Source of the DNA: Octopus sinensis
Taxonomy: Eukaryota
Assembly: GCF_006345805.1 (NCBI RefSeq)
Contig: NC_043003.1
Span: 34,720,001-34,784,000, forward strand
DNA: 64,000 bases
Reading direction: 5' to 3'
Numbering within the stretch: position 1 is the first letter of the stretch; each line of letters opens with the position of its first letter. Under the pieces are notes generated by a model. The model was not told the origin of the DNA. It searched no databases and saw only the letters and a list, made by a program, of their open reading frames with translations. Below are positions 1,963 to 56,329 of this stretch, piece after piece. The position numbers and the translations under genes are program-made.

Positions 1963-3224
1963 ATGTAGGTATGAAAATTCCAGAAGCGTAAGTCGTAACG
2001 TCTTTGATTCTAGAGAATAAGAGGGAAATATCAAATATATTATTGCTGTTGTTGTGGCGGCGGCAGCGGTGATGCTGAGATTCGTAAAGTTAATCAGTTA
2101 GCGAGCTGAACTTGATCTTGTTTATAGCTAATTCCGTTAATATAAGCTGCTAAAATATTTCATAAAGATACGAACATCTAAGTGGAAATTTCCTTTCTGT
2201 TACAAGAGCATGGTCTTTTTACATACGAAATGTTTAATGGCAAGCGCTATGAAGTAAACATTCAACCGTGTGCAAAGCGAAACTATGACTAAGTTCTGAT
2301 TATTTTAGTAGCATAGACTGATAGATTAAGAGTGAAACAGAGACAGAGAGATGGAAAACAAAGAGCGGGACACTGCATATATATGTGTGACAGCGCGCGC
2401 ACACGTGTGTATGTGTGAGTGTTAGTCTGTCTTTGACATGAAGATAGAGAGAATGACTGAGCCGCAGGGGCCGATTGACAGTTATTAAACAAGCTACGCA
2501 TATATCAACATAAACAACAAATATTAATAAAGACAGACGGGTGAAAACATTGGGAAATACAAACTAACAAAACCACGTCTCTAATAGGGAAACGAAAGCA
2601 AAGAAAAATAAACAAAGACGTCGGCAAAATTAGGGCAAACAAAAGATAAAGAAAAAAAATTAACAAATTTAATGAAAGTTTGCACACACACACACAACAC
2701 ACAAGCAAATATATACATATATACACACATGTATAAGTAGGCATGAATTTGTGTGTGTACACAAGTACAGAAACACAAACACACACACACACACACACAC
2801 ATACTATGCAAACCCTCGCATATTCAAGTATGCGTGCATGTTTGTGTGCGTTTATGCGTCAGCGTGTTGTATGATCATGCGTGTACAGTGTATTTGTATA
2901 TGTGTTTGTGTATATACATGCAAGCATACATGTATGTACAGCGTTGACGTAAAGGGCGAAAAATACGGTAAACAAAATAAAAGCAACGCTTATTTACAAA
3001 CAGCTCTAGAACATATGTAAACATGGACGCTATGGTTAGGGGACAAACATGTTAATCGGGTGACAAACACGGTTAAGGCTGTTTAAAGCTTTTCAGTCGG
3101 CTATCTTTCAACCTAACAAAATGTATAAAAAGAAGAGATAGACTGACACGGGTGTAAGACAGCTGACGGATAGGAAAACAACTTAGCAGATTCGCTCATT
3201 TTCTTTCTTTGCTGCTACTGATAG

Positions 3225-3900
3225 TGTAGTTTGTCGTTGTTGTTATTGCTGTTGTCGTTGTGATTACTATACAGCTTGTGGAGATGTTAATGTTGTTGTT
3301 GTTGGAGGTGGTTGCGGTGATAGTAATGGTGGTGTTATAATGAGGATGATGATGATGGCAGTAGCAGAGATTACTGTTGAGCAGCAAGAAGACAACGGTA
3401 ACATCGATGATGATGATGATGATGATGATGGTGATGATGATGGTGATGATGATGGGGATGATGATGATGGTGGTGATGATGGTGATGATGGTGATGTTGG
3501 TGATGATGGTGGTGGGGATGATGGTGATGATGGTGGTGGTGATGATGGTGGTGATGGTAGTGGTGGTGGTGATGGTGGTGGTGGTGGTGACGACGACGAC
3601 GACGACGACGACAACGACAACGACGTTGATATTAACGATAATGATAATAATGACTAATAAGAAATAAAACTGTTGACAATAACTATGGTCTTAACGACAC
3701 CGCTACAGCTACTAATGATGATGATGAGGAGGAGGAGGAGGAAGATGTTAATCAATATGATGATGCTAATGATGATGATCATGATAATACTTATGATAAT
3801 CATTATTACAAAGATGACGATAAAGATGTTGAGGTGATGATGGCAATGATAACGACGATGATGATGATGATGATGATGAAAATGAGGACAATCAATGATG
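3225..3900. repeat. Compound degenerate trinucleotide array (GAT/GGT/GAC/GTT)
   Basis: Directly visible. It produces the poly-D/G, poly-M/V and poly-S/P ORFs in the track. Confidence 0.9.
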
Positions 3901-4313
3901 ATAACGATGACGGTGATGACGGTAATGACGTTGAAGATGAGAAGGTGAAAGGGAGAATAGAGACCCCAGAGTCAAATTTTTGTAGTTATTATCTTGTATA
4001 TTTAAAGGTGGTTGCTCACCATTGAGAACATGCTGCTCTGGAGTGATAGATGTCCATGTGATAAGCCAGTGCTCAGAACCCTTTACAAGGCTCCAAAAAT
4101 AATGGAAGGAATGAAGGTTTCCTCAAACCGGACAGATGTCTCGAATGCTTAGATTCCAATAAAGGCCTCTAAAAAAGCGTCCAAAGTGACTGGTGGTAGA
4201 ATTAAACCTATATAAGCCATAAAAGGATTTGAATTCAGAATGGAGTGAGCTGGAAAGTATATCACAAATTATCGGATCTGATATTGTAAGAATTCCAGGA
4301 TCATCATCCAGGA

Positions 4314-4420
4314 TTGGTACAAATGTTTATCGATCCCGAAAAGTTGATTTCGGCGGGATTTCAATGCAGAACGCTGAGGCATTCTCTAAGATGTTCTAAC
4401 AACCCAACCAAATTACCGCT
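4314..4420 (-). mobile_element. Degenerate SINE remnant (family B)
   Basis: GGTAC..TTTATCGATCCCGAAAAGTTGATTTCGGCGGGATTTCAATGCAGAACG resembles the remnant at 44735-44830 and my recollection of a common octopus SINE. Confidence 0.4.
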
Positions 4421-4523
4421 GGTTCTTAGAGAGAGAAAGAGAGAGGGAGAGAGAACAAGAATTGAGAGTGAACCTGTAGAAGAAAATTAAATTTAAGAAC
4501 TAGGGAATCAGGCATGCTGAAAT

Positions 4524-4645
4524 GTGGAGTGGCTGTGTGGTTAAGAAGCTTGCTTATCAACCAATTGGTCTTGGTTTCAGTCCCACTGCATGGCTCCTTG
4601 ATTAAATACATTCCATCATAAACATGGGCCGACCAAAGCCTTTTC
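4524..4645 (+). mobile_element. tRNA-derived SINE (family A), degenerate
   Basis: GTGGCTGTGTGGTTAAGAAGCTTGCTT...TTCAGTCCCACTGCATGG...GGGCCGACCAAAGCCTT, homologous to 1172-1278. Confidence 0.7.
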
Positions 4646-4774
4646 AATCGATTTAGTACTTGTCATTCTTAAAAAGAAAACTGTTAGTGTAAGAGAAAGA
4701 AACTTGAGTGCTATTTGCAGCAAGCCAAGCGGCTGATCTGATTGCTCCGTCGTTGGCTCTAGATAAAGAGCTGC

Positions 4775-4777
4775 TGC

Positions 4778-4819
<42 letters not shown>

Positions 4820-4902
4820 GGTGGTGGTGGTAGTAGTAATTGTAGTAATAGTGATAGTAGTAGTAGTATAGTAGTAGTAGTGGTGGTGGTGGTGGTGTGG
4901 TG

Positions 4903-4937
<35 letters not shown>

Positions 4938-5095
4938 GGTGGTAGTGATGGTGGTGGTGGTGGTAGTAATAGTAGTAGTAGTAGTAGTAGTAGTAATGGT
5001 AGTAATGGTAGTAGTGGTAGTAGTAGTGGTAGTAGTAGAAGTGATGGAGGTGGTGGTGGTGGCGGCGGCGGTTACAGTGGTGGAAACCGTTTATA
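4775..5095. repeat. (TAG)n/(TGG)n trinucleotide array
   Basis: Directly visible. Confidence 0.9.
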
Positions 5096-14747: not shown

Positions 14748-14996
14748 AAAATAGCGTTTAAAATTTATGACAGCTGTTTCGGTAGAATTTATCAGCGTAT
14801 TCATATTTCTACATCATAACATGCAAACTATTCATGTAAGATTTAAACAGGTAAGATATTAAACAAGTGAGTTTTTGAACGTCTTACCAGTTTAAAATTT
14901 TACTTGAATGTGGTAACTTATATGCTATGACGTAATCTATAAATAAATCAATAAAATTCTACCGAAACAGGTGTCATGAATTTTAAAGGCCATTTC
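14748..14996. repeat. ~250-bp imperfect palindrome (foldback element)
   Basis: TTTAAAATTTATGACAGCTGTTTCGGTAGAATTT (14757-14790) matches the reverse complement of AAATTCTACCGAAACAGGTGTCATGAATTTTAAA (14954-14987) at 32/34. The inner arms pair down to a ~23-nt spacer near 14858-14880. Confidence 0.85.
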
Positions 14997-24773: not shown

Positions 24774-26040
24774 AGGTAAATTGCCACCATTCTTTATTTT
24801 TTAGTTTTTATTTCGTGCATGGGCATTATTTGTTTTTCATTTTCTGAACTTCACAGTACAGTAGGGTCAGTTGGGTGCCCTCTGAGAGAGAAACAGCACT
24901 GTGATGCAAATCACTCTGCCAGAAATTTGGAAACGACATGCTGTACTGCTTGGCTTTTGCGCCAGAAGTTCCTGCACAAACATTTCAGAGTGTTTAGGTG
25001 TCAACTTGACACCCAAACACTCTGTTACAGTGAAGTAGACTCGTAAAGAGTTGGATGAGAATCTAATAATGATTACGAAAGCACGGCAGGTCGGAAAACT
25101 CACTGTGATCTTTCTGATGAGAAAAGAACTCCTGAATTCTTTGGTGAGATCCAGGCCATGATTGACAATAATCCCTCCAAGTCAATCAGGTTCATCGCCA
25201 CGGACATGGGAGTGTCTAAGTTCCTTACCAGGCAGGTAGTGCATAAAGACATTCAGTATTTCTTATATAAGATGGGAAAGGGTCAATTTTAACCCAAGCC
25301 ACCAATGACAAGATGAGAGACTACGCTACAACGCTTTTGAACAAACTCAAGCATCCCCTCCAACCGAATAAGCTTTGGTTTTTCTCAGAGGAGAAAAATT
25401 TCTGCCAGGACCAGATGGTAAACACATAGAGCAACCATTGGCTTGCCGTGTCCCCAAAACATGTACCAAGTGTGATAAATATAAAACATCCAATCAACAT
25501 TATGGTGTTTGGAGCGATCAATAGTGATGGCGACGTTATGTCTCCATTCATCTTCCCACACGGCCTCAGACTCAACACGGAGTCCTACATCAAGTGCCTG
25601 GAGGCTTTAGTGCTGCTCTGGATCAAGAGGATGGCTACCGGACGAACATATGTCTGGCAACAGGACTCTGCACCATGTAAAACAAACAGGAGAACCCAGT
25701 CATGGCTGTCAGGAATTTCTGCGACTACATCAATCCCCTAACATCTGACCACATAACTCCCCAGGCAGCAACCCGCTTGATTATTATGTGTGGGCGCAGT
25801 TGAGCGAGAGACCAACAAAACTCCTTGTGAGACCAAAGATGACCTGAAGGCAAGGATTATGGCAGCATTCCCCAACTTAAACAAGGACACCGTTCAGAAG
25901 AGTTGCAGGATATCCCGAAGTCGTCTAGGGGCCGTGGTTGAAGCTAATGGAAAATTTTATTGCACAAACTTACTCTTTAGTGTTTCAAGATAGCTTTCTG
26001 TAATTTTGGTAAATGTATGTTAAAATGAGATATTAAAATG
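24774..26040 (+). mobile_element. Degenerate Tc1/mariner-superfamily transposon, DD37D (maT-like) transposase pseudogene
   Basis: Broken frames from ATG 24904: MQITLPEIWKRHAVLLG..., WFFS(E)EKNFCQD, IMVFGAINSDG, YVWQQDSAPC..., NSP..NPLDYYVWGAVERETNK...RSRLGAVVEANG. After frameshift correction there are 37 residues between the 2nd and 3rd catalytic D. Several stops and frameshifts; no 3' TIR found. Confidence 0.9.
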
Positions 26041-26084
26041 AGTGTCAGATCACAACTATGTAGGGCGTACCCCTTTGAGAATAC

Positions 26085-26416
26085 CATGGCATGTAGGATT
26101 AGCCCTGTCATTAACTGTAGAACTAGAAATGTAGTTTACAGCTTAAGATGCATAGAAAGTGCTTTTAAAGACATGAACATGACATACATAGAGGAGGTAT
26201 CCAGGAGCATTGCGGAACGACTAAATGAACATTTGAGACAATATGACGACAAAAATCCATCCTCCATATTCTACCAACATGCCAAGGGCCAAGATGGAGG
26301 AAACCTGTGTTAACTTGACATCCACATCTTATCCAAGCACCCAAAGGACACAACACTCAGACAAATATGAGAGTACGTCCTCATAAATGAAACTTCCCCA
26401 ATACTAAATAGGAAAT
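26085..26416 (+). mobile_element. Penelope-like element fragment, GIY-YIG endonuclease domain (pseudogenised)
   Basis: INCRTRNVVYSLRCIES...TYIEEVSRSIAERLNEH...SSIFYQH...*LDIHILSKHPKDTTLRQI*EYVLINETSPILNRK fits the PLE pattern C..NVVY...C..C...YIGET.R....R..EH...E...I....P.LN. Confidence 0.8.
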
Positions 26417-26890
26417 ATACATAGTACATATCATATCCCCATATCCAGAGTTTACACAGGTAGAGAATAGTGGGCTGTTATGTAGATAGATGTATGTGTG
26501 TATGTGGGGTGTGTATGTATATATATATATGTATGTATGTACATAGATGTATGTGTGTGTAGGTGGGTGTATGTATATATGCATATGCACATGCATGTAA
26601 GCATATGGATCTGAAAGTAAACAGATCAACATACAGATGGATAAGTACATAGATTATATGAACAGACAAGCACACATACGCAAATGAAGACTGAAACGCA
26701 TGACAATATATACACACACTTTACTTCACACAAGGACACATGGAGACACACGGCCACACATATGAAGACTCACATCCATACATACAAATACGGTACATAG
26801 TTGCAAAAAACACACACACACTCAGACATGCACACACAAGGAGACAGAGGTACACACACACACACACACACACACCACATATATATATAT

Positions 26891-26942
<52 letters not shown>

Positions 26943-27459
26943 CACACACATACGCGCGCACACAAGCATAAAAACATAGAAACACGGACATGCAAACACA
27001 TGAATATGCAGAATACATGCAAATGTACAGACATAAATAGATACATATGCACACACACACACATACATGCATACACACACATATACCTAAATACATGTAT
27101 AGGCACACACTGATCCACACACATGTGAACAAACAAGCAAAAAGGAACACAGTGTGAGTAACGGACAAAACTACTGAAGAGGTTGCAAGATGCAACGAAA
27201 ATTTTAGAAAAATAAAAAAAGGAATAAGTGGAAGTTTTACCGGTGAGTGTCTTAAATTATAAGGTAGCAAAAAAGAATGACTCTTCCCAGACACAACAGA
27301 ATATATATATAATTGTGTAAGTAAAATTGCATAATTTATTAACAGTGAAACAATTGTATGGGGTTAATCTATTTTTTTTGTTATTTTTCATTTGTCCTGC
27401 TTGCTTACGTTCATAGTGTGCTAAATTTTTCTTAGTGGTTGAGACTCATGCGGATCTCT

Positions 27460-27501
<42 letters not shown>

Positions 27502-27530
27502 TTTATTAAAAGGCAGCAAAACTATCACAG

Positions 27531-27574
27531 AAACTGTTACTCAGAGTTTCACGTTCCCGTTCTTCGGACATTTT
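27531..27574 (-). ncRNA. Type I hammerhead-ribozyme-like motif, U4C core variant (mirror copy)
   Basis: Reverse complement AAAAUGU | CCGAAGA | ACG-GGAA-CGU | GAAA | CUCUGAGU | A | ACAGUUU: 3-bp helix II, near-palindromic helix III (ACUCUGAGU), GUA triplet. Confidence 0.55.
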
Positions 27575-27620
27575 AAAAACTGTCCGACGAACGGGAACGC
27601 GAAACTGAGTAACAGTTTTT
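27575..27620 (+). ncRNA. Type I hammerhead-ribozyme-like motif, U4C core variant
   Basis: AAAAACUGU | CCGACGA | ACG-GGAA-CGC | GAAA | C-UGA-GU | A | ACAGUUUUU: 9-bp helix I, core, helix II (A-C mismatch at base), short helix III, GUA cleavage triplet. Confidence 0.6.
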
Positions 27621-27719
27621 TGGATAGTTTTGCTGCTTTTTAATAAAGCATATTACTCTACTTCTGTACTATTCGAGTACTATTTTTTCCATCTTGTTTT
27701 GCATTCAAGTGCTTACTCT

Positions 27720-27769
<50 letters not shown>

Positions 27770-27770
27770 A

Positions 27771-27818
<48 letters not shown>

Positions 27819-28479
27819 TAACACATATATATATATACACACACACACACATATATATATATATATGTATCATACAACGTTAGAAGTAAAGAGGTTTAAC
27901 CTTGTCTAACAATATTTACATTAATATAATGCTACCGAATGTCTATTAACTCACCAACTCACGAATGATCAGTTGTTGTCTACTGTATGCGCCTTTTCTT
28001 CCCTAACTGCAGAATATATAAATATATTTGCATCAATTCTTTGTAAGAATGATTACAAGTATCTTACATTTACAGGCAAAGCTTGAGTTGTAATATGCTA
28101 AAACTAACTAGTTGGTAAAATTACTCGCATGCACTCACAATATGCTTTTTTATTTTTATATATAAAATTTCCGTTACTAATGAGTAGAATGACACAGGAA
28201 GAAACAGCTAAGAACTGCAGGAACTTAGCTTTACTTTAACTGACTTACAGAACTCTTTGATAATATAATACATGCGACGATTATCAAAACAATACTATTA
28301 GCCAAATTTTCATAACAGCTTGTTGTGGCTGTCAGAAACCTAACCATGAATTGCTTTCCCCAGTAGAAGTGGCAACAAAATATCGTATCTGATATACTAT
28401 ATGAATAAGGGATCCTGCTGGGTGATAGGCTATCAGTACACTTCTTTACTCTCTTTTTTGGATCCCTTTATATACTTGC

Positions 28480-38985: not shown

Positions 38986-39980
38986 GTGTACTCATACATA
39001 CACAAACATATCTATGTATACACCGATAGAAAGAAAAGAGAAAGAAGTGGAGTGATACATAGATACACTCAAACATACATAAATAAAAAGATACAAATTT
39101 GTGAGAGATTGTGGAGAAAAGAAATGAAAATATAAATGAAAAGCAAAATACGAGACATTAAAGGAAGGTTTCAATATTCATCCATCAAGTTTAATTTGTG
39201 TTCCTATCCCAATACAAAGTGACCCGTAGTGTTTGGCCACTTTCAATAGGGATTTTTAAAAAAGAAATCTATCCAGCCCCTTTTGTCGATATATCGTTTC
39301 TTTACGCTTACTTTAGCAGCAATATTGATATAACATGAAGCATAACCACCATCTCTGCGCTCCCTTGTTCATTCTCTCTCAATTCATACATACATACATA
39401 CATACATACATACATCAATTCATACTCTTATTAACGATTTTGTTTTTATGATAAATAGCTTCCCAAGTCACAGGGATTCATAATTCCGGTGCTTAACTTC
39501 AGATTCAGTAGCTTTTAGCGTGCGAGGCATGAGTCAACCCCTGCTAACACGCCAGACCATCGCAGTCAATATTCCAATATTAAAGCATCTGTTTCAAACA
39601 ACTAGAGAACTGAGGCATGTAAAATTAAGTGTATGGCAAAAATTATGTAATACATCATAGAAAAATAGAAATGCATTATAGAAAAATTACGCAATATATC
39701 ATAAAGCAACATACACTGTAGTCAGACAGTTTATATATCAATCGATTTTCAGAATAAATCATCTGATGGTGTAAATTTGACAATAAATATTGGAGAAAAT
39801 TTAGGTAACACGCCATAGAACAGACGAATTAATTCCATACAAGAATATATATTTCGCGTTTTTTTTTTCTGAAATATCTTCGGGTTTATAACTCCAAAGA
39901 GGCGCTTCGTATCTTACAATGGAAGAATCATAAATTCGTCTCAAACAACATCCATCTTAATGATACACATACACACACAC

Positions 39981-40523: not shown

Positions 40524-40600
<77 letters not shown>

Positions 40601-41784
40601 GGTCTCTCTCTCCTGTGTTCCCCTCTCTCATATAATATAACAGGAGAGAGAGAGAGTGAGAGAGAGACCTACATATACAATTCCCCAATCTTTACGATAT
40701 ATGTGCTAATATATACAACTTAAAACTTAAACGACGGTGAATAACTTATGTAGAATAAAATTTATTTACGAATAAAACCAAAAAATGTTTGCAGCGTGTT
40801 TAAACTTTCCTGCGTTGTTTTACATATGCAGACACAAATTTGTAGGTAGATACATATATTCAGTGTTAATATTTAAATGTATTCCACCGAATCGAGGCAT
40901 GAAGCTTTAAAATTGTCCCAAGAATTCGATACGAGTTAATATTCACGATATATCGATGATATAAGCGCTACGAGGAAGGATGTATTTTGACTGGCATTCA
41001 ATGTGTTCAGTAGGCAAACAACTGCAAAATATAGGAACTCAAATCTATTCTTACCGTAGCTCCTCTGCTTTTACTTTCACTTTACACATATACACGATGC
41101 CGGCATAGACACAGAGATATATGTGCTAGGAAGTAGTGTGTGATTAAGAAGAATGTTATTTGAGACGAATTTATGATTCTTCTATTGTACGATACGAAGA
41201 GCCTCTTTGGAGTTATAAACCCGAATTTATATAATCAAATGCAGTAAAAGAAATAAAGTAAAATTATATTAAGCGTGCTTGCAGATTCGACAAGCCAAAT
41301 TTTAGAAACCAAATTGCAACACTGATTACTGCAATATAAATTTTGTTCGATTTAACATGAAGTCGATGATTTTACTGGTTACATTGAATTTACAAATTAC
41401 ATTGGGTGCTGAATTATGTTGTGTGGCTTGCAAATTTGGGTTTTTCATGTTGATATGTAGATGTTTAATTTTCTTGATTTTGCTATATACGTTAGCTTTT
41501 GGTCAGATGTGATACAAGTGCTATATTTATCAGTTTGTTAATGAGAATCAGTTGTATAATTAAGTTGGGTTTTGTTGGGTTTTGCCTAATTTGCATGAGG
41601 GTAAATTTCTATTGCTTGATCTAGAAACCTATTCGACTATTTGTTATCAGCAAGTGGTTTTGCTAGGTAAATCCTCACATATGTTACCTTTGCCATTCAT
41701 TCATTCATTCATTCGTTCGTTCTTTCTTTCATTCATTCATTCATTCAAAATCAATAATATGAGATAGTTCTTTGTTGTTGTTCT

Positions 41785-44912: not shown

Positions 44913-46108
44913 TCAGGTTGGTGAAAATTTAAAGGCCGATTTTAAGGTCTCTATTAAAAACGAAAAAAGCCATGATTAAGACAATATTTATTCGTTGACA
45001 TAATTTCCACTGCTTTCTAGAACTTCGTTACATCTTTCAACAAGCTTATAAATGCCACGCTTGTAAAATTGTTTAGGTTTTCATTTTCGGCCTCTTGATG
45101 TCAATCTAAGACAATTCAAACAGTTCTGTGATCCCTGAAACAACTGATAACCAGAAAGAGCGAGGTCTGGAGAATATGGAGGATGAAGTAATATTTCCCA
45201 ACTAAGCTTTGGTCAGTCGAGTTGTATGAAGACGAGCATTATCATGGTGAAAAATGCCACACTTTCTGTTGATTAAGCAGTGTCGCTTTCTGTTCAAAGC
45301 GGCTTTCAAACAATGAAGTTGATCACAGTAGAGATTACCAGTTTGATTGCTGTATAACAGTTCGTAACGGGCAATTTATTCAATACCCCAGCATACACTC
45401 AGCATGATCTTCTTTGATGAAGTTTTCCTCTTAGATGTTGAACAGGTCTTCCTCCTCGACTGATCCAGGTTGGCGGCGTTCAACGTTATAATAAAGGGTC
45501 CATTTCTCATTATCTGTAATAAGCCTTCCTATGGTGTGAAAACAATGACTGACCGCAAACAACACGCCGTTGCAGATTCTCTGGTGACAGTTCGTGCGAG
45601 ATCCATTTTCCAGCCATGGAAACCTTTCCAATCCTTTTCAAACGGAGTAGAACAATTGTATGGGCTTCGGTAAACTCTTCTGCAAGGGCTCTACGAATAG
45701 CGGTTTCACTTTCTGTGACAGCAGCTTCCAACTCTTCGATATCGTGTCGTTTTGAACGACCTTCTTTCAAACTCAAATTTCCACATCCGAAGCGAGAAAA
45801 CCATCTCTTGCAACTTCTTTCACTCACTACATCATCTCTATAAACCCTGTGAAGACATTTTGCTGCTGCGCTTGCATTGACACCTTTATGAAACTCATAG
45901 AGTAAGATATGTCTAATGTGGTCTTTAGATTGGATATGGGTGCGAATATAGCAGAAGATTATGGCCAATACAATGAGAAACTGAAAGAAAAATGTATAAA
46001 TTACTCATTGTGACATTCTTAAAACATCGCAAGAGGTACAATTTAAAAAAAATACTATCTAAAACTATTTTCTAAAAAAAATTGGCTATTACATTTGCAC
46101 CAACCTGA
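44913..46108 (-). mobile_element. mariner (DD34D-type) transposon, TIR-to-TIR, transposase pseudogene
   Basis: TA-flanked imperfect TIRs TCAGGTTGGTGAAAATTTAAAGGCCGATTTT / rc TCAGGTTGGTGCAAATGTAATAGCCAATTTT. Minus-strand protein HIRHILLYEFHKG...RWFSRF...GKWISHELS, ITDNEKW, FHHDNARLH, HPPYSPDLALSG. Frameshifted, with the catalytic residues partly lost. Confidence 0.95.
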
Positions 46109-54619: not shown

Positions 54620-55524
54620 CGAGGTGTTATCAAAAAGTTCCCGGACTAGTTCTGTAGCCTGCCAACAGATTGCAGCACACGGCTGCGTGCGCAGTGAGAG
54701 TTGGCAGTGGCCTTCATGACGTAGTTTACCTAGTGACAACGCTGAGTTTACTTCGTAAGTTGTGAGATTTGTGTTGTTGTGATCAAGTGTATGATATTCT
54801 TTGCGATTTTGTCATGGACAAGAACAAAGTGCCAACTTGAAATTTTACGTTGAACTTGGGAAGTCTGCTACAGAGAAGTTGAGCATGCTTCGGCAAGCTT
54901 ACGGCGACGAGGCAATGGGTCGTGCGCAATGTTTCAAGCGGCATGGGCGCTTCAAAAGCAGAAGAGCGTCTCTGGAATACCTGTCACGAGCGTCGCCACC
55001 GAAAATGTGGCATTGTGCATGGTGAATTCGCTCCCTCCCTCCAGGGCCAGACCGTCAATCGAAAATTCTACTGCGACATTTCGAAGCGTTTGAGAGGGAC
55101 ATTCAGCAAAAGAGACTGGATCTGTGGAACACAAAGGATTGGATTATTCACGACGACAATGCACCCTTTCACCGAGCTCACCTTACTCGTCAGTTTCTCG
55201 CCCAAAACAACGTGGTATTGCTTCCACACCCGCTCTATTCGCCAGATTTAGCACCTGCGGACTTCCATCTATTCCACAGGATAAAGATGCAACTCAAAGA
55301 TCGCCGTTTTAACGCCCTTGTCGAGATCCAGAGCGAATCGCAGAAGCTATTCGTTTCGCTTGCAGTAAACAATTTCCACGTCGGAATTCCTAAAGTAACA
55401 GGAACGCCGAGACCGGTGTATCGCTGCGCAAGATGTGTATTTAGAAAGATGATGCTAAAATTTAGGCAAATAAGTTATTTTTTGTTAACCATAACAAGTC
55501 CTGGAACGTTTCGATACCACCTCG
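54620..55524 (+). mobile_element. Internally deleted mariner (DD34D) transposon with both TIRs
   Basis: TA-flanked TIRs CGAGGTGTTATCAAAAAGTTCCCGGACT / rc CGAGGTGGTATCGAAACGTTCCAGGACT. The N-terminus (SANLKFYVELGKSATEKLSMLRQAYGDEAMG) joins directly to GIVHGEF..QGQTVNRKFYC and IIHDDNAPFH...HPLYSPDLAPADFHLF, with 34 residues between D2 and D3. The WVPxxL motif and first D region are missing. Confidence 0.95.
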
Positions 55525-56329
55525 TATTTGAAGGATATTCAGCTGCTATATTCTGCAGATCGAGTGACCAAGTATAGGTTCTTTCTTCAGTTCATCCCCA
55601 TTCATTACTTGGTAGGCGTAGGTACGTCAACCCCATGGATTAGATTTAATCACAAATTTTTACCAGCTAACCTCAATTAATTGAAAACACTTAATTGCCA
55701 CGTAAAGAATAAACTTCCAAGAATCGATTTCATTTATTCCACTGGCGTTCCAGTAATAGTTATTCTTAGGTGTTTAGGAAGTGTGTGTGCATATGTATTT
55801 TGAGAAAAAATACCTGATGTATGTTGGGTCAGGGTCAACGCACTCTTTCGTTCTGTGGGGTCGATAAAGAAAACATGAGTAATATGATGAAAAGAACTGA
55901 CAAATGTATCAAAGGGAAACAGTGTCATACGAATCTATCTCTAGGGGGCAAAAACTCATGATAGCAACTTCATATCAACTCAATGTAAATTTCCAGTCGA
56001 TAAAACTATGAATCATACTTACTTCTTTTACTGTAGTTTTAACATAATCATAAATGTATTGTTATAATATGGTGCAATCATATAACTATCATTATCAGAC
56101 AAACATACATATGTTTGTGTGACAATATACACATACATATCTATAAACTTACACATGCATACGTGCACATTCATGCACAAAGAAGATGCTTCCATATACA
56201 ATTTTGGGTGTTTTATTTGTGAAAGCTATTGATAGACATAGATTGATGGAGGTATATGTTCACTCCTCCCATTAAATCAGTTTTATACGCATAAGTATCT
56301 TGTGCAAGCATGTATGAATGTACATCTAT

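What the first reader, a model, noticed from the sequence alone, without database searches (positions are those of the whole stretch)
27501..27720. A MITE-looking palindrome is two back-to-back hammerhead folds with a shared U4C core
Seen: each arm of the 148-bp inverted repeat, read outward from the centre, has complete type I hammerhead topology. Right arm: 9-bp helix I AAAAACUGU/ACAGUUUUU, core CCGACGA, GGAA-capped helix II, GAAA, short helix III, GUA. Left arm: CCGAAGA with near-palindromic helix III ACUCUGAGU. Both arms carry C instead of the conserved U4, although they differ elsewhere, so the variant predates their divergence. Only the right arm continues into a ~70-nt tail. Inference: this is an inverted terminal-repeat product of a Penelope-like element, or a small non-autonomous ribozyme-bearing retroelement, rather than a DNA-transposon MITE. 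Any read-through transcript carries a ribozyme preceded by its own antisense copy, so the long hairpin would compete with the catalytic fold. That hairpin is also a plausible ADAR substrate (extensive A-to-I editing is established in coleoids), which could make cleavage switchable.
Basis: partly seen in the sequence, partly recalled or inferred. Interest (0 to 1): 0.8.

Follow-up and report, generated by a model that had tools for sequence, protein, structure and literature searches.

The report
Decayed retroelement foldback with hammerhead-like arms
A 148-base palindrome with a 72-base one-sided tail, lying inside a TA microsatellite, has the shape of the head-to-head truncated insertions left by Penelope-like retroelements; each arm can be drawn as a hammerhead ribozyme with one core base changed, but nothing shows that it cleaves, and it is most likely an ordinary dead copy.

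Summary
The sequence features are real. A 148-bp palindrome (27501-27648) has two 74-nt arms about 87% alike and no spacer. A 72-nt tail lies on the right only, and (TA)n lies on both sides. Each arm, read outward, matches a type I hammerhead at 11 of 12 conserved core positions (C for U4).

The ribozyme reading is weak:
- Helix II is two G-C pairs plus A.C or A-U, not G10.1-C11.1.
- Helix I of the left arm is interrupted.
- The hammerhead fold is less stable than other folds of either arm.
- The arms show no covariation, and Rfam reports no hammerhead.
- I found no second copy anywhere.
- The shared C4 follows from the arms' common origin.

The Penelope-like element (PLE) inference is partly supported:
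- Inverted 5'-truncated arms, a one-sided tail and a microsatellite target are the documented PLE insertion signature.
- I saw the same layout in a recent PLE insertion (L021).
- A separate, decayed PLE copy lies just upstream (26041-27305).
- The arms show no sequence similarity to the five PLE 3' ends compared.

Verdict: probably a dead PLE-type foldback insertion, a new member of a known kind, of low interest.

The parts
27463..27494 (.). (TA)16, left part of the target microsatellite
   Evidence: TRF, 16 perfect copies; sequence
27495..27500 (.). CACACA between the TA tract and the palindrome; either filler or microsatellite
   Evidence: sequence
27501..27574 (-). Left arm of the palindrome. 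It is the inverted copy; read on the minus strand it runs outward from the centre and ends in AAUAAAG
   Evidence: (I6)
27531..27574 (-). Left-arm hammerhead-like motif: AAAAUGU / CCGAAGA (27567-27561) / ACG-GGAA-CGU / GAAA / CUCUGAG / U A17 (27538) / ACAGUUU. Helix I is interrupted by an A.G mismatch
   Evidence: read; descriptor hit at 27567 minus strand; fold energy +1.7 against MFE -4.7 kcal/mol
27575..27648 (+). Right arm of the palindrome
27575..27620 (+). Right-arm hammerhead-like motif: helix I 27575-83 with 27612-20 (9 bp); core CCGACGA 27584-90 (C at position 4); helix II ACG-GGAA-CGC 27591-600 (A.C at 10.1/11.1); GAAA 27601-04; helix III A-U and C-G with loop UGA; A17 at 27611; notional cleavage between 27611 and 27612
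   Evidence: descriptor hit; fold energy -3.0 against MFE -7.9 kcal/mol; no Rfam hit
27649..27720 (+). One-sided 72-nt tail following the right arm only
   Evidence: sequence; no counterpart left of 27501; no similarity elsewhere in the window
27722..27870 (.). (TA)~76, right part of the target microsatellite
   Evidence: TRF
26041..26415 (+). Context, a separate element: decayed GIY-YIG endonuclease domain of a 5'-truncated Penelope-like element. It is read through stops, and no RT is left
   Evidence: phmmer, 42 hits, best 1.4e-21; tblastn to residues 404-534 of the 547-aa RT-EN protein P0050, E = 2.6e-27; relatives carry GIY-YIG and RVT_1
26416..27305 (+). Context: 3' region of that PLE copy, swollen by microsatellites. 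It is colinear with the paralogue L001 up to about 27305 and then unrelated
   Evidence: blastn 66-72%; alignment; no similarity beyond 27305
27171..27207 (+). Context: canonical-core PLE minimal hammerhead, CUA CUGAAGA G GUUGC-AAGAU-GCAAC GAAA AU UU UAG (cleavage between 27204 and 27205).
   Evidence: zero core mismatches; same architecture next to the ORF ends of related PLEs L021, L022 and L023; covariation

Best explanation
The 226-bp unit (27495-27720) is a dead, heavily 5'-truncated retro-insertion made by Penelope-like-element (PLE) machinery into a (TA)n microsatellite.

**Proposed mechanism (inferred)**
- cDNA synthesis began near the 3' end of a short hammerhead-bearing RNA. That RNA was either the 3' end of a PLE pseudo-LTR or a PLE-mobilised non-autonomous, retrozyme-like RNA.
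- On one side synthesis began at the more distal start site, which left the 72-nt tail.
- Synthesis stopped about 74 nt in, at the 5' edge of the hammerhead.
- The product was then mirrored head to head. This could happen by priming from both cleaved target strands or by snap-back of the reverse transcriptase onto its own cDNA. Either route gives two inverted arms with no spacer.

**State of the motif**
- The hammerhead-like motif in each arm is what remains of that source ribozyme.
- It carries C at position 4 and a weak helix II, either inherited from its source or acquired at copying.
- It has since decayed by about 13% between the arms.
- Today it probably has no ribozyme function. Any transcript through it would fold into a 74-bp hairpin instead.

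**What is shown and what is inferred**
- Shown: the anatomy, the microsatellite context, the lack of DNA-transposon ends, the neighbouring PLE copy, and the energetic dominance of the hairpin.
- Inferred: the retro-insertion mechanism and descent from a true hammerhead.
For: - Anatomy: two 74-nt arms with no spacer, a tail on one side only, and TA tracts on both sides. Perfect (TA)>=6 tracts cover only 3.2% of the window.
- Literature: PLE insertions are often 5'-truncated with an adjacent inverted 5'-truncated copy. They carry a 30-40-bp tail, often at one end only. They have hammerheads near the 3' end and favour microsatellites, including (TA)n (PMC8557442). The PLE enzyme cleaves and extends both target strands and initiates at two adjacent internal sites, which explains the tail (PMC11167929). 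Paired minimal hammerheads 100-700 bp apart on opposite strands were reported in 2014 (PMC4209133).
- Direct analogue, L021: inverted arms 2559-3479 and 4052-4972 at 99.3% identity, a minimal hammerhead reading outward near each outer end, a tail of about 62 nt on one side only, and (AATC)n flanks.
- A PLE copy with its own covariation-supported minimal hammerhead ends 195 bp upstream. PLEs tend to insert into or beside earlier PLE copies (PMC6765202).
- Its closest protein relatives include an ORF in Octopus bimaculoides GCA_001194135.2. Penelope elements are among the most enriched old repeat families of coleoids (PMC8967140).
- The hammerhead-like motif is rare by chance in complex sequence: 0.007 per shuffled window.
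- Between the arms the conserved core is unchanged except at the free position N7.
- Neither the unit nor the palindrome has the terminal repeats or target-site duplication of a DNA transposon. There is no tRNA-like part.
Against: - No second copy was found: none in the window, viral contigs or prokaryotic genome contigs. The 11 metagenome hits are GC-rich contigs matching only the 22-mer, which I read as bacterial chance matches. A six-frame protein search also found nothing. No cephalopod genome could be searched by DNA.
- Arm plus tail have no significant similarity to the 3' ends of five PLE copies, including the neighbouring one.
- The motif departs from PLE minimal hammerheads and from the hammerhead consensus: C4, A10.1 with C or U at 11.1, and a 2-3 bp helix II.
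- With decoy descriptors on the real window, an equally good match turns up for 4.7% of decoys.
- The arms show no covariation. Left-arm helix I has lost a pair without compensation.
- The tail is 72 nt, against the 30-40 bp described in the literature.
- Arms of exactly equal length are not the usual outcome of two independent truncations.
Confidence: 0.5

Rival explanations
1. The palindrome is a DNA-level foldback with no ribozyme ancestry. It could be a foldback MITE, or a local inverted duplication made by template switching in an unstable microsatellite region. On this reading the hammerhead resemblance is chance.
For: - The window holds other complex palindromes beside TA tracts: 14749-14995, and 40593-40677, which is flanked by TA on both sides.
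- 4.7% of decoy descriptors find an equally good match somewhere in the real window.
- The motif misses U4 and G10.1-C11.1.
- The hammerhead fold is not the preferred fold of either arm.
- There is no Rfam hit, no covariation and no other copy.
- Arms of exactly equal length with no spacer are what snap-back DNA synthesis would give.
Against: - The palindrome has no TA or other recognisable target-site duplication, and the TA-bounded unit has no terminal inverted repeats.
- The one-sided tail inside the TA-bounded unit is unexplained by a MITE.
- In shuffled sequence the motif is expected 0.007 times per 128 kb searched. For it to fall by chance inside a palindrome arm of about 150 nt is therefore of the order of 1e-5 to 1e-4.
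- Most decoy hits lie in microsatellites, not in complex sequence.
Confidence: 0.3
2. One reading: the arms are a working U4C hammerhead variant, the family consensus of a small ribozyme-bearing retroelement. Its cleavage would be gated by competition with the long hairpin, possibly through A-to-I editing.
For: - 11 of 12 core positions match, and helix II is capped by a GNRA loop.
- Between the arms the only core difference is at the free position N7.
- A natural U4C hammerhead is known: activity is much reduced in vitro but sufficient for viroid infectivity (PMC3088659). The same paper notes that stem II is commonly as short as 2 bp.
Against: - This is a single copy with arms about 13% diverged.
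- Left-arm helix I is broken, and right-arm position 10.1/11.1 is A.C.
- The hammerhead fold is +1.7 to -3.0 kcal/mol, against -94 for the hairpin.
- PLE minimal hammerheads with perfect cores already cleave poorly in vitro (PMC4209133).
- The arm differences are mainly C/U and transversions, not the A/G pattern that editing would leave.
- There is no evidence of transcription.
Confidence: 0.05
3. Whatever its origin, the locus now acts as a long-hairpin RNA gene, a precursor of small RNAs.
For: - The hairpin is near-perfect, 74 bp, -93.8 kcal/mol, z = -20.
- Rfam microRNA-precursor models align to it below their thresholds, for example mir-4773 at 45 bits against a gathering score of 100.
Against: - Those matches reflect hairpin shape only and all fall far below the gathering scores.
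- There is no expression or conservation data.
- Stems this long and this perfect are typical of young inverted repeats, not of conserved microRNA genes.
Confidence: 0.1

Closest known systems
Penelope-like element (PLE) insertions with an adjacent inverted 5'-truncated copy and a one-sided tail (Penelope/Poseidon, Neptune, Naiad and others; PMC8557442, PMC11167929)
   Same: Head-to-head inverted arms; a hammerhead(-like) motif reading outward near each outer (3') end; an extra tail at one end only; insertion into a microsatellite, with (TA)n named as a preferred target. I saw the same layout directly in L021.
   Different: The arms are only 74 nt and of exactly equal length. There is no coding sequence. 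The tail is 72 nt, against 30-40 bp in the literature and about 62 nt in L021. There is no sequence link to any PLE examined.
Minimal hammerheads of PLE pseudo-LTRs (Cervera and de la Pena 2014, PMC4209133), as at window 27171-27207 and in L021, L022 and L023
   Same: Type I topology, a short helix III, and occurrence in pairs on opposite strands.
   Different: PLE minimal hammerheads have CUGANGA, an extra nucleotide after A9, a G10.1-C11.1 pair, a 5-8 bp helix II and a 3-6 bp helix I. The arms have CCGANGA, A10.1 with C or U at 11.1, a 2-3 bp helix II, a 9-bp helix I and a real helix III hairpin.
Canonical metazoan type I hammerheads of non-LTR retrozymes (PMC7229834; proposed as PLE-derived in bioRxiv 10.64898/2026.07.22.740005)
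   Same: Type I, low G+C, a short helix III of 1-2 bp with a small loop, and a small non-coding unit.
   Different: Retrozymes are direct tandem repeats of roughly 170-400 bp with loop-loop contacts. Here there is an inverted pair, no tandem array, and no internal loop in helix I.
Natural U4C hammerhead variant of a viroid (cited in PMC3088659)
   Same: The same core substitution.
   Different: The viroid variant sits in an otherwise complete, selected ribozyme with tertiary contacts. Here the helices are weak as well, and there is no evidence of selection.
Foldback MITEs
   Same: A short, AT-rich, non-coding, near-perfect palindrome beside TA repeats. Other such palindromes occur in this window.
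   Different: No recognisable target-site duplication, an asymmetric tail, and no second copy found.

Membership tests
Hammerhead ribozyme, type I | Conserved core C3 U4 G5 A6 N7 G8 A9 / G12 A13 A14 / A15.1-U16.1 / H17 | tested here: not met
   11 of 12 positions match in both arms; position 4 is C. U4C is a known natural variant with much reduced activity (PMC3088659).
Hammerhead ribozyme, type I | Three helices around the core in type I order, with helix I open | tested here: inconclusive
   Right arm: helices of 9, 2(+A.C) and 2 bp. Left arm: helix I is 3 bp, a mismatch, then 3 bp; helices II and III are 3 bp each. The fold can be drawn but is not favoured: -3.0 and +1.7 kcal/mol against MFEs of -7.9 and -4.7.
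Hammerhead ribozyme, type I | G10.1-C11.1 closing pair of helix II | tested here: not met
   A.C in the right arm, A-U in the left arm.
Hammerhead ribozyme, type I | Match to the curated covariance models (Rfam hammerhead families) | tested here: not met
   No hammerhead hit at the gathering score or at E<=10. Control: the canonical-core minimal hammerhead at 27171-27207 is also missed, so the test has little power for minimal forms.
Hammerhead ribozyme, type I | Covariation that keeps the helices across family members | tested here: inconclusive
   Only the two arms are available: no change on both sides of any pair, and two cells unpaired.
Hammerhead ribozyme, type I | Site-specific self-cleavage after H17 | not testable with these tools
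   Needs transcription and cleavage assays.
Penelope-like element insertion | RT plus GIY-YIG coding sequence, or demonstrable sequence continuity with a PLE family | tested here: not met
   The unit has no ORF. It has no significant similarity to five PLE 3' ends. The neighbouring PLE copy ends at about 27305.
Penelope-like element insertion | 5'-truncated copy with an adjacent inverted 5'-truncated copy (inverted pseudo-LTR structure) | tested here: met
   Two head-to-head 74-nt arms. Analogue in L021. Feature as described in PMC8557442.
Penelope-like element insertion | Tail extension at one end only | tested here: met
   A 72-nt tail on the right only. The literature gives 30-40 bp (PMC8557442, PMC11167929); L021 has about 62 nt.
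Penelope-like element insertion | Insertion bias for microsatellites, with (TA)n among the preferred targets | tested here: met
   (TA)16 on the left and (TA)~76 on the right. TA tracts cover 3.2% of the window.
Penelope-like element insertion | Hammerhead motif in the terminal repeat, near the 3' end | tested here: inconclusive
   A hammerhead-like motif lies 37 nt from the arm end, but with C4 and atypical helices.
MITE (non-autonomous DNA transposon) | Terminal inverted repeats bounded by a superfamily-specific target-site duplication | tested here: not met
   The palindrome's flanks are ...ACACACA and CATATTA..., which form no TA, TTAA or longer duplication. The TA-bounded unit has no terminal inverted repeats.
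MITE (non-autonomous DNA transposon) | Many dispersed copies, with a related autonomous transposase element | tested here: inconclusive
   No other copy in the 64-kb window or in the collections that could be searched. The source genome itself could not be searched.
Metazoan non-LTR retrozyme | Direct tandem repeats of about 170-400 bp, each with a type I hammerhead | tested here: not met
   Apart from the microsatellites, no direct or tandem repeat includes the unit.

The most novel reading that the evidence does not exclude
The C4 hammerhead is the true consensus of a still unrecognised family of small, PLE-mobilised, non-autonomous elements in octopods. These elements would habitually insert as foldbacks, so that each transcript carries a ribozyme and its antisense. 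Cleavage would then depend on whether the hairpin is melted or edited.
Probability: 0.04. Interest if true: 0.65.

Novelty: new member of a known kind. Interest (0 to 1): 0.25.

Why it matters
As it stands, this is one more decayed retroelement scar in a repeat-rich genome that looks like an octopod's.

Its value is as an annotation lesson:
- Short palindromes beside microsatellites in such genomes need not be MITEs. PLE-type head-to-head insertions produce them too.
- The real PLE hammerhead of this locus (27171-27207) is a minimal form that Rfam models miss.

The finding would gain interest only if genome-wide copies showed a conserved C4 core and an assay showed cleavage. It would then add a natural animal example of a U4C hammerhead.

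Tried and rejected
**Searches for other copies and for known RNA families**
1. Rfam at the gathering score and at E<=10 found no hammerhead, only microRNA-hairpin lookalikes far below threshold. The control on the canonical minimal hammerhead was also negative.
2. Searches for other copies all failed:
   - blastn in the window;
   - arm patterns in viral contigs and prokaryotic genome contigs;
   - a metagenome scan, whose 11 hits are all GC-rich contigs that match only the 22-mer, so I read them as bacterial chance matches;
   - a concatenated six-frame translation of the unit against 5.8 billion proteins.
3. Exact look-ups of three window ORFs found nothing on record, so the source assembly was not identified.

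**Leads followed and dropped**
4. Pfam on six-frame translations and on the endonuclease ORF gave no hit. The first word-indexed protein search was also empty. The exhaustive phmmer search then identified the GIY-YIG remnant.
5. A 17-nt match of the arm's helix II region just downstream of an O. bimaculoides PLE ORF (L024) looked promising. It has no 5' core, and by eye it lines up with an ordinary stretch of the neighbouring PLE family's 3' region, so I treat it as chance.
6. I considered and dropped homology of the palindrome with the neighbouring PLE's 3' end, and extension of that PLE beyond 27305.
7. A tRNA-SINE origin is not supported: ARAGORN found nothing.
8. I did not build a covariance model from the five PLE minimal hammerheads. 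With three effective sequences it would test sequence likeness, not hammerhead membership.

Full report
**1. What is in the sequence**

Bases 27501-27648 form a palindrome. The stretch matches its own reverse complement at 86.7% over 150 columns (pair I6). The symmetry centre lies between 27574 and 27575, so there are two 74-nt arms with no spacer. As RNA, either strand folds into a single hairpin of about -93 kcal/mol (z about -20).

Only the right arm continues, for 72 nt (27649-27720). The unit lies between (TA)16 at 27463-27494, followed by CACACA, and a (TA)~76 tract at 27722-27870. Perfect (TA)>=6 tracts cover 3.2% of the window, so TA tracts on both sides are unlikely to be coincidence. 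No other copy of any part of the unit exists in the 64-kb window.

**2. The hammerhead drawing**

| Part | Right arm (+) | Left arm (-) |
|---|---|---|
| Helix I, 5' strand | AAAAACUGU (27575-83) | AAAAUGU |
| Core | CCGACGA (27584-90) | CCGAAGA (27567-61) |
| Helix II | ACG-GGAA-CGC | ACG-GGAA-CGU |
| Conserved box | GAAA | GAAA |
| Helix III and H17 | C-UGA-G, U, A17 (27611) | CUCUGAG, UA |
| Helix I, 3' strand | ACAGUUUUU (27612-20) | ACAGUUU |

Eleven of the twelve conserved core positions are present, and position 4 is C. My relaxed type I descriptor finds the right arm as the only hit in the window with at most one core mismatch and a helix I of 4 bp or more. It finds the left arm when helix I may be 3 bp.

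**3. How much of that is chance**

- A match at least as good (at most 1 core mismatch, helix I of 9 bp or more) occurs 0.007 times per dinucleotide-shuffled window.
- Of 300 decoy descriptors with scrambled core letters, run on the real window, 4.7% find at least one equally good match. Most of those lie in microsatellites.
- Taken alone, the motif is therefore suggestive. That it sits inside one of only three complex palindromes in the window makes pure coincidence less likely.
- The two arms are copies of one another, so 'both arms' counts once. A shared C4 follows from their common origin and does not show a selected variant.

**4. Weaknesses of the ribozyme reading**

- Helix II is two G-C pairs plus A.C (right) or A-U (left), not the usual G10.1-C11.1.
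- Left-arm helix I has lost the C that pairs with G, without compensation. Across the arms no pair changes on both sides.
- The hammerhead secondary structure scores -3.0 kcal/mol (right) and +1.7 (left). Alternative folds reach -7.9 and -4.7. The whole-unit hairpin reaches -100.7.
- Rfam reports no hammerhead at any threshold tried. Rfam also misses a canonical PLE minimal hammerhead 400 bp away, so that silence carries little weight.
- U4C is not unheard of. A viroid variant with U4C is much less active in vitro yet viable in vivo, and stem II is commonly as short as 2 bp (PMC3088659).

**5. The neighbourhood: a real PLE with a real hammerhead**

On the same strand, 26041-26415 is a decayed GIY-YIG endonuclease domain.
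- An exhaustive phmmer search gave 42 hits, the best at 1.4e-21.
- tblastn aligns the stretch, through its stops, to residues 404-534 of the 547-residue protein P0050 (E = 2.6e-27).
- The relatives carry RT motifs such as YSRYVDD. P0025 has Pfam RVT_1 and GIY-YIG.
- That is the RT-plus-C-terminal-GIY-YIG layout of canonical PLEs. Only the endonuclease part survives here, so the copy is 5'-truncated.

A paralogous copy, L001 (a Logan contig), is colinear with the window from 26045 to about 27304 at 66-72% identity and then unrelated. This PLE copy therefore ends near 27305.

Within it, at 27171-27207, my descriptor found a hammerhead with no core mismatch: CUA CUGAAGA G GUUGC-AAGAU-GCAAC GAAA AU UU UAG.
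- It has the extra nucleotide after A9, the G10.1-C11.1 pair and the palindromic 15.2/16.2 dinucleotide that define PLE minimal hammerheads (PMC4209133).
- The same architecture sits at or within about 90 nt of the ORF ends of three related PLE copies on long contigs, L021, L022 and L023.
- Across these sequences six pairs change on both sides, and 82% of cells are paired against 41-55% when the partners are slid.
- A GGUGAGU splice-donor-like site at 27242-27248 is conserved in L001. This fits the introns reported in PLE repeats (PMC6765202).

**6. Is the palindrome PLE-derived?**

It is not part of the neighbouring copy, which ends 195 bp upstream. Arm plus tail show no significant similarity to the 3' ends of five PLE copies. 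Its architecture, however, is the PLE insertion signature:
- an adjacent inverted 5'-truncated copy, a tail at one end only, hammerheads near the 3' end, and a microsatellite target with (TA)n named explicitly (PMC8557442);
- cleavage and extension of both target strands, and two internal initiation sites that explain the tail (PMC11167929);
- paired minimal hammerheads on opposite strands 100-700 bp apart (PMC4209133).

L021 shows this directly. Its inverted arms, 2559-3479 and 4052-4972, are 99.3% identical. Each carries a minimal hammerhead reading outward. About 62 extra bases lie on the left side only, and (AATC)n flanks both sides.

By contrast, the palindrome has no recognisable target-site duplication. 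The TA-bounded unit has no terminal inverted repeats, and there is no tRNA-like part. One protein relative of the endonuclease remnant is encoded in GCA_001194135.2, the Octopus bimaculoides assembly. Penelope and Tc1/mariner are among the most enriched old repeat families of coleoids (PMC8967140).

**7. Most likely explanation and rivals**

- Best explanation (about 0.5): a dead, extremely 5'-truncated, head-to-head PLE-type retro-insertion of the 3' end of a hammerhead-bearing RNA into a (TA)n tract. The source would be a PLE repeat end or a PLE-mobilised non-autonomous RNA. The hammerhead is degenerate or a variant and is now functionless. The anatomy and context are shown; the mechanism and the ribozyme ancestry are inferred.
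- Main rival (about 0.3): a DNA-level foldback, either a MITE or a local inverted duplication, with a chance hammerhead resemblance.
- Working U4C ribozyme pair with a hairpin or editing switch (about 0.05).
- Present use as a small-RNA hairpin (about 0.1). This is not exclusive of the others and is untested.

**8. Limits**

No cephalopod genome could be searched by DNA with these tools. Copy number, family consensus at position 4, RT/EN linkage of the arm family and empty sites therefore remain open. All indirect routes to other copies failed.

**9. Verdict**

The PLE-type origin is the best reading but is unproven for this element. The functional ideas are unsupported. This is a new member of a known kind, of low interest.

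Noticed in passing
window 26041-27305 (+): A 5'-truncated, decayed Penelope-like element. It has a GIY-YIG endonuclease remnant (26041-26415, read through stops), a 3' region swollen by microsatellites, and an end near 27305 at a short TA run. The paralogue L001 is colinear with it at 66-72% identity.
   Followed up: yes
window 27171-27207 (+): A PLE minimal hammerhead with no core mismatch: CUGAAGA, a bulged G, a 5-bp helix II with G10.1-C11.1, GAAA, a palindromic AU, then UU. Rfam does not detect it. The same architecture occurs in related PLEs, with covariation. In L001 the homologous site has decayed to UUGAAAA...GAGA.
   Followed up: yes
window 27242-27248 (+); L001 about 1569-1575: A GGTGAGT splice-donor-like site about 40 nt downstream of the PLE hammerhead, conserved between the two copies. 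L021 has GTAAGT at a similar place. It may be the PLE repeat intron.
   Followed up: partly
L021 2559-4972 (ENA ERZ25066847, contig ctg1128): A recent head-to-head PLE insertion. Its 921-bp inverted arms are 99.3% identical and (AATC)n flanks both sides. About 62 extra bases lie on the left side only. The minimal hammerhead overlaps the last codons of the ORF (...ILTEEAAEGR).
   Followed up: partly
window 40593-40677: An 85-bp CT/GA-rich palindrome flanked by TA on both sides, directly after a long (TA)n tract. It looks like a Tc1/mariner-type MITE.
   Followed up: no
window 14749-14995: A 247-bp complex palindrome with arms about 73% complementary, about 20 bp upstream of a (TA)9 tract. It looks like a foldback MITE and has no hammerhead-like motif.
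   Followed up: no
window 39879-39968 and 41136-41225: 90-bp inverted repeats, 91% complementary, flanking 1168 bp. This may be a small DNA transposon with terminal inverted repeats.
   Followed up: no
window 25448-25741 (+), 45510-45968 (-), 55212-55577 (+): Decayed fragments that by eye resemble Tc1/mariner transposases. Only 45510-45968 has a database match (Pfam HTH_48, E = 3e-19). The fragment at 25448 onward ends just before the PLE endonuclease remnant begins.
   Followed up: partly
L004-L014 (JGI metagenome contigs): The 22-mer CCGANGAACGGGAACGYGAAAC occurs in 11 GC-rich (53-69%) contigs, several of them near-identical. Similarity does not extend beyond the 22-mer, so I judge them unrelated to the arm.
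   Followed up: yes
whole window: Most long ORFs are translations of microsatellites (poly-YI, poly-CV, poly-HT and similar), not genes. The window is 65% A+T and dense in (TA)n, (CA)n and (AGAT)n.
   Followed up: no
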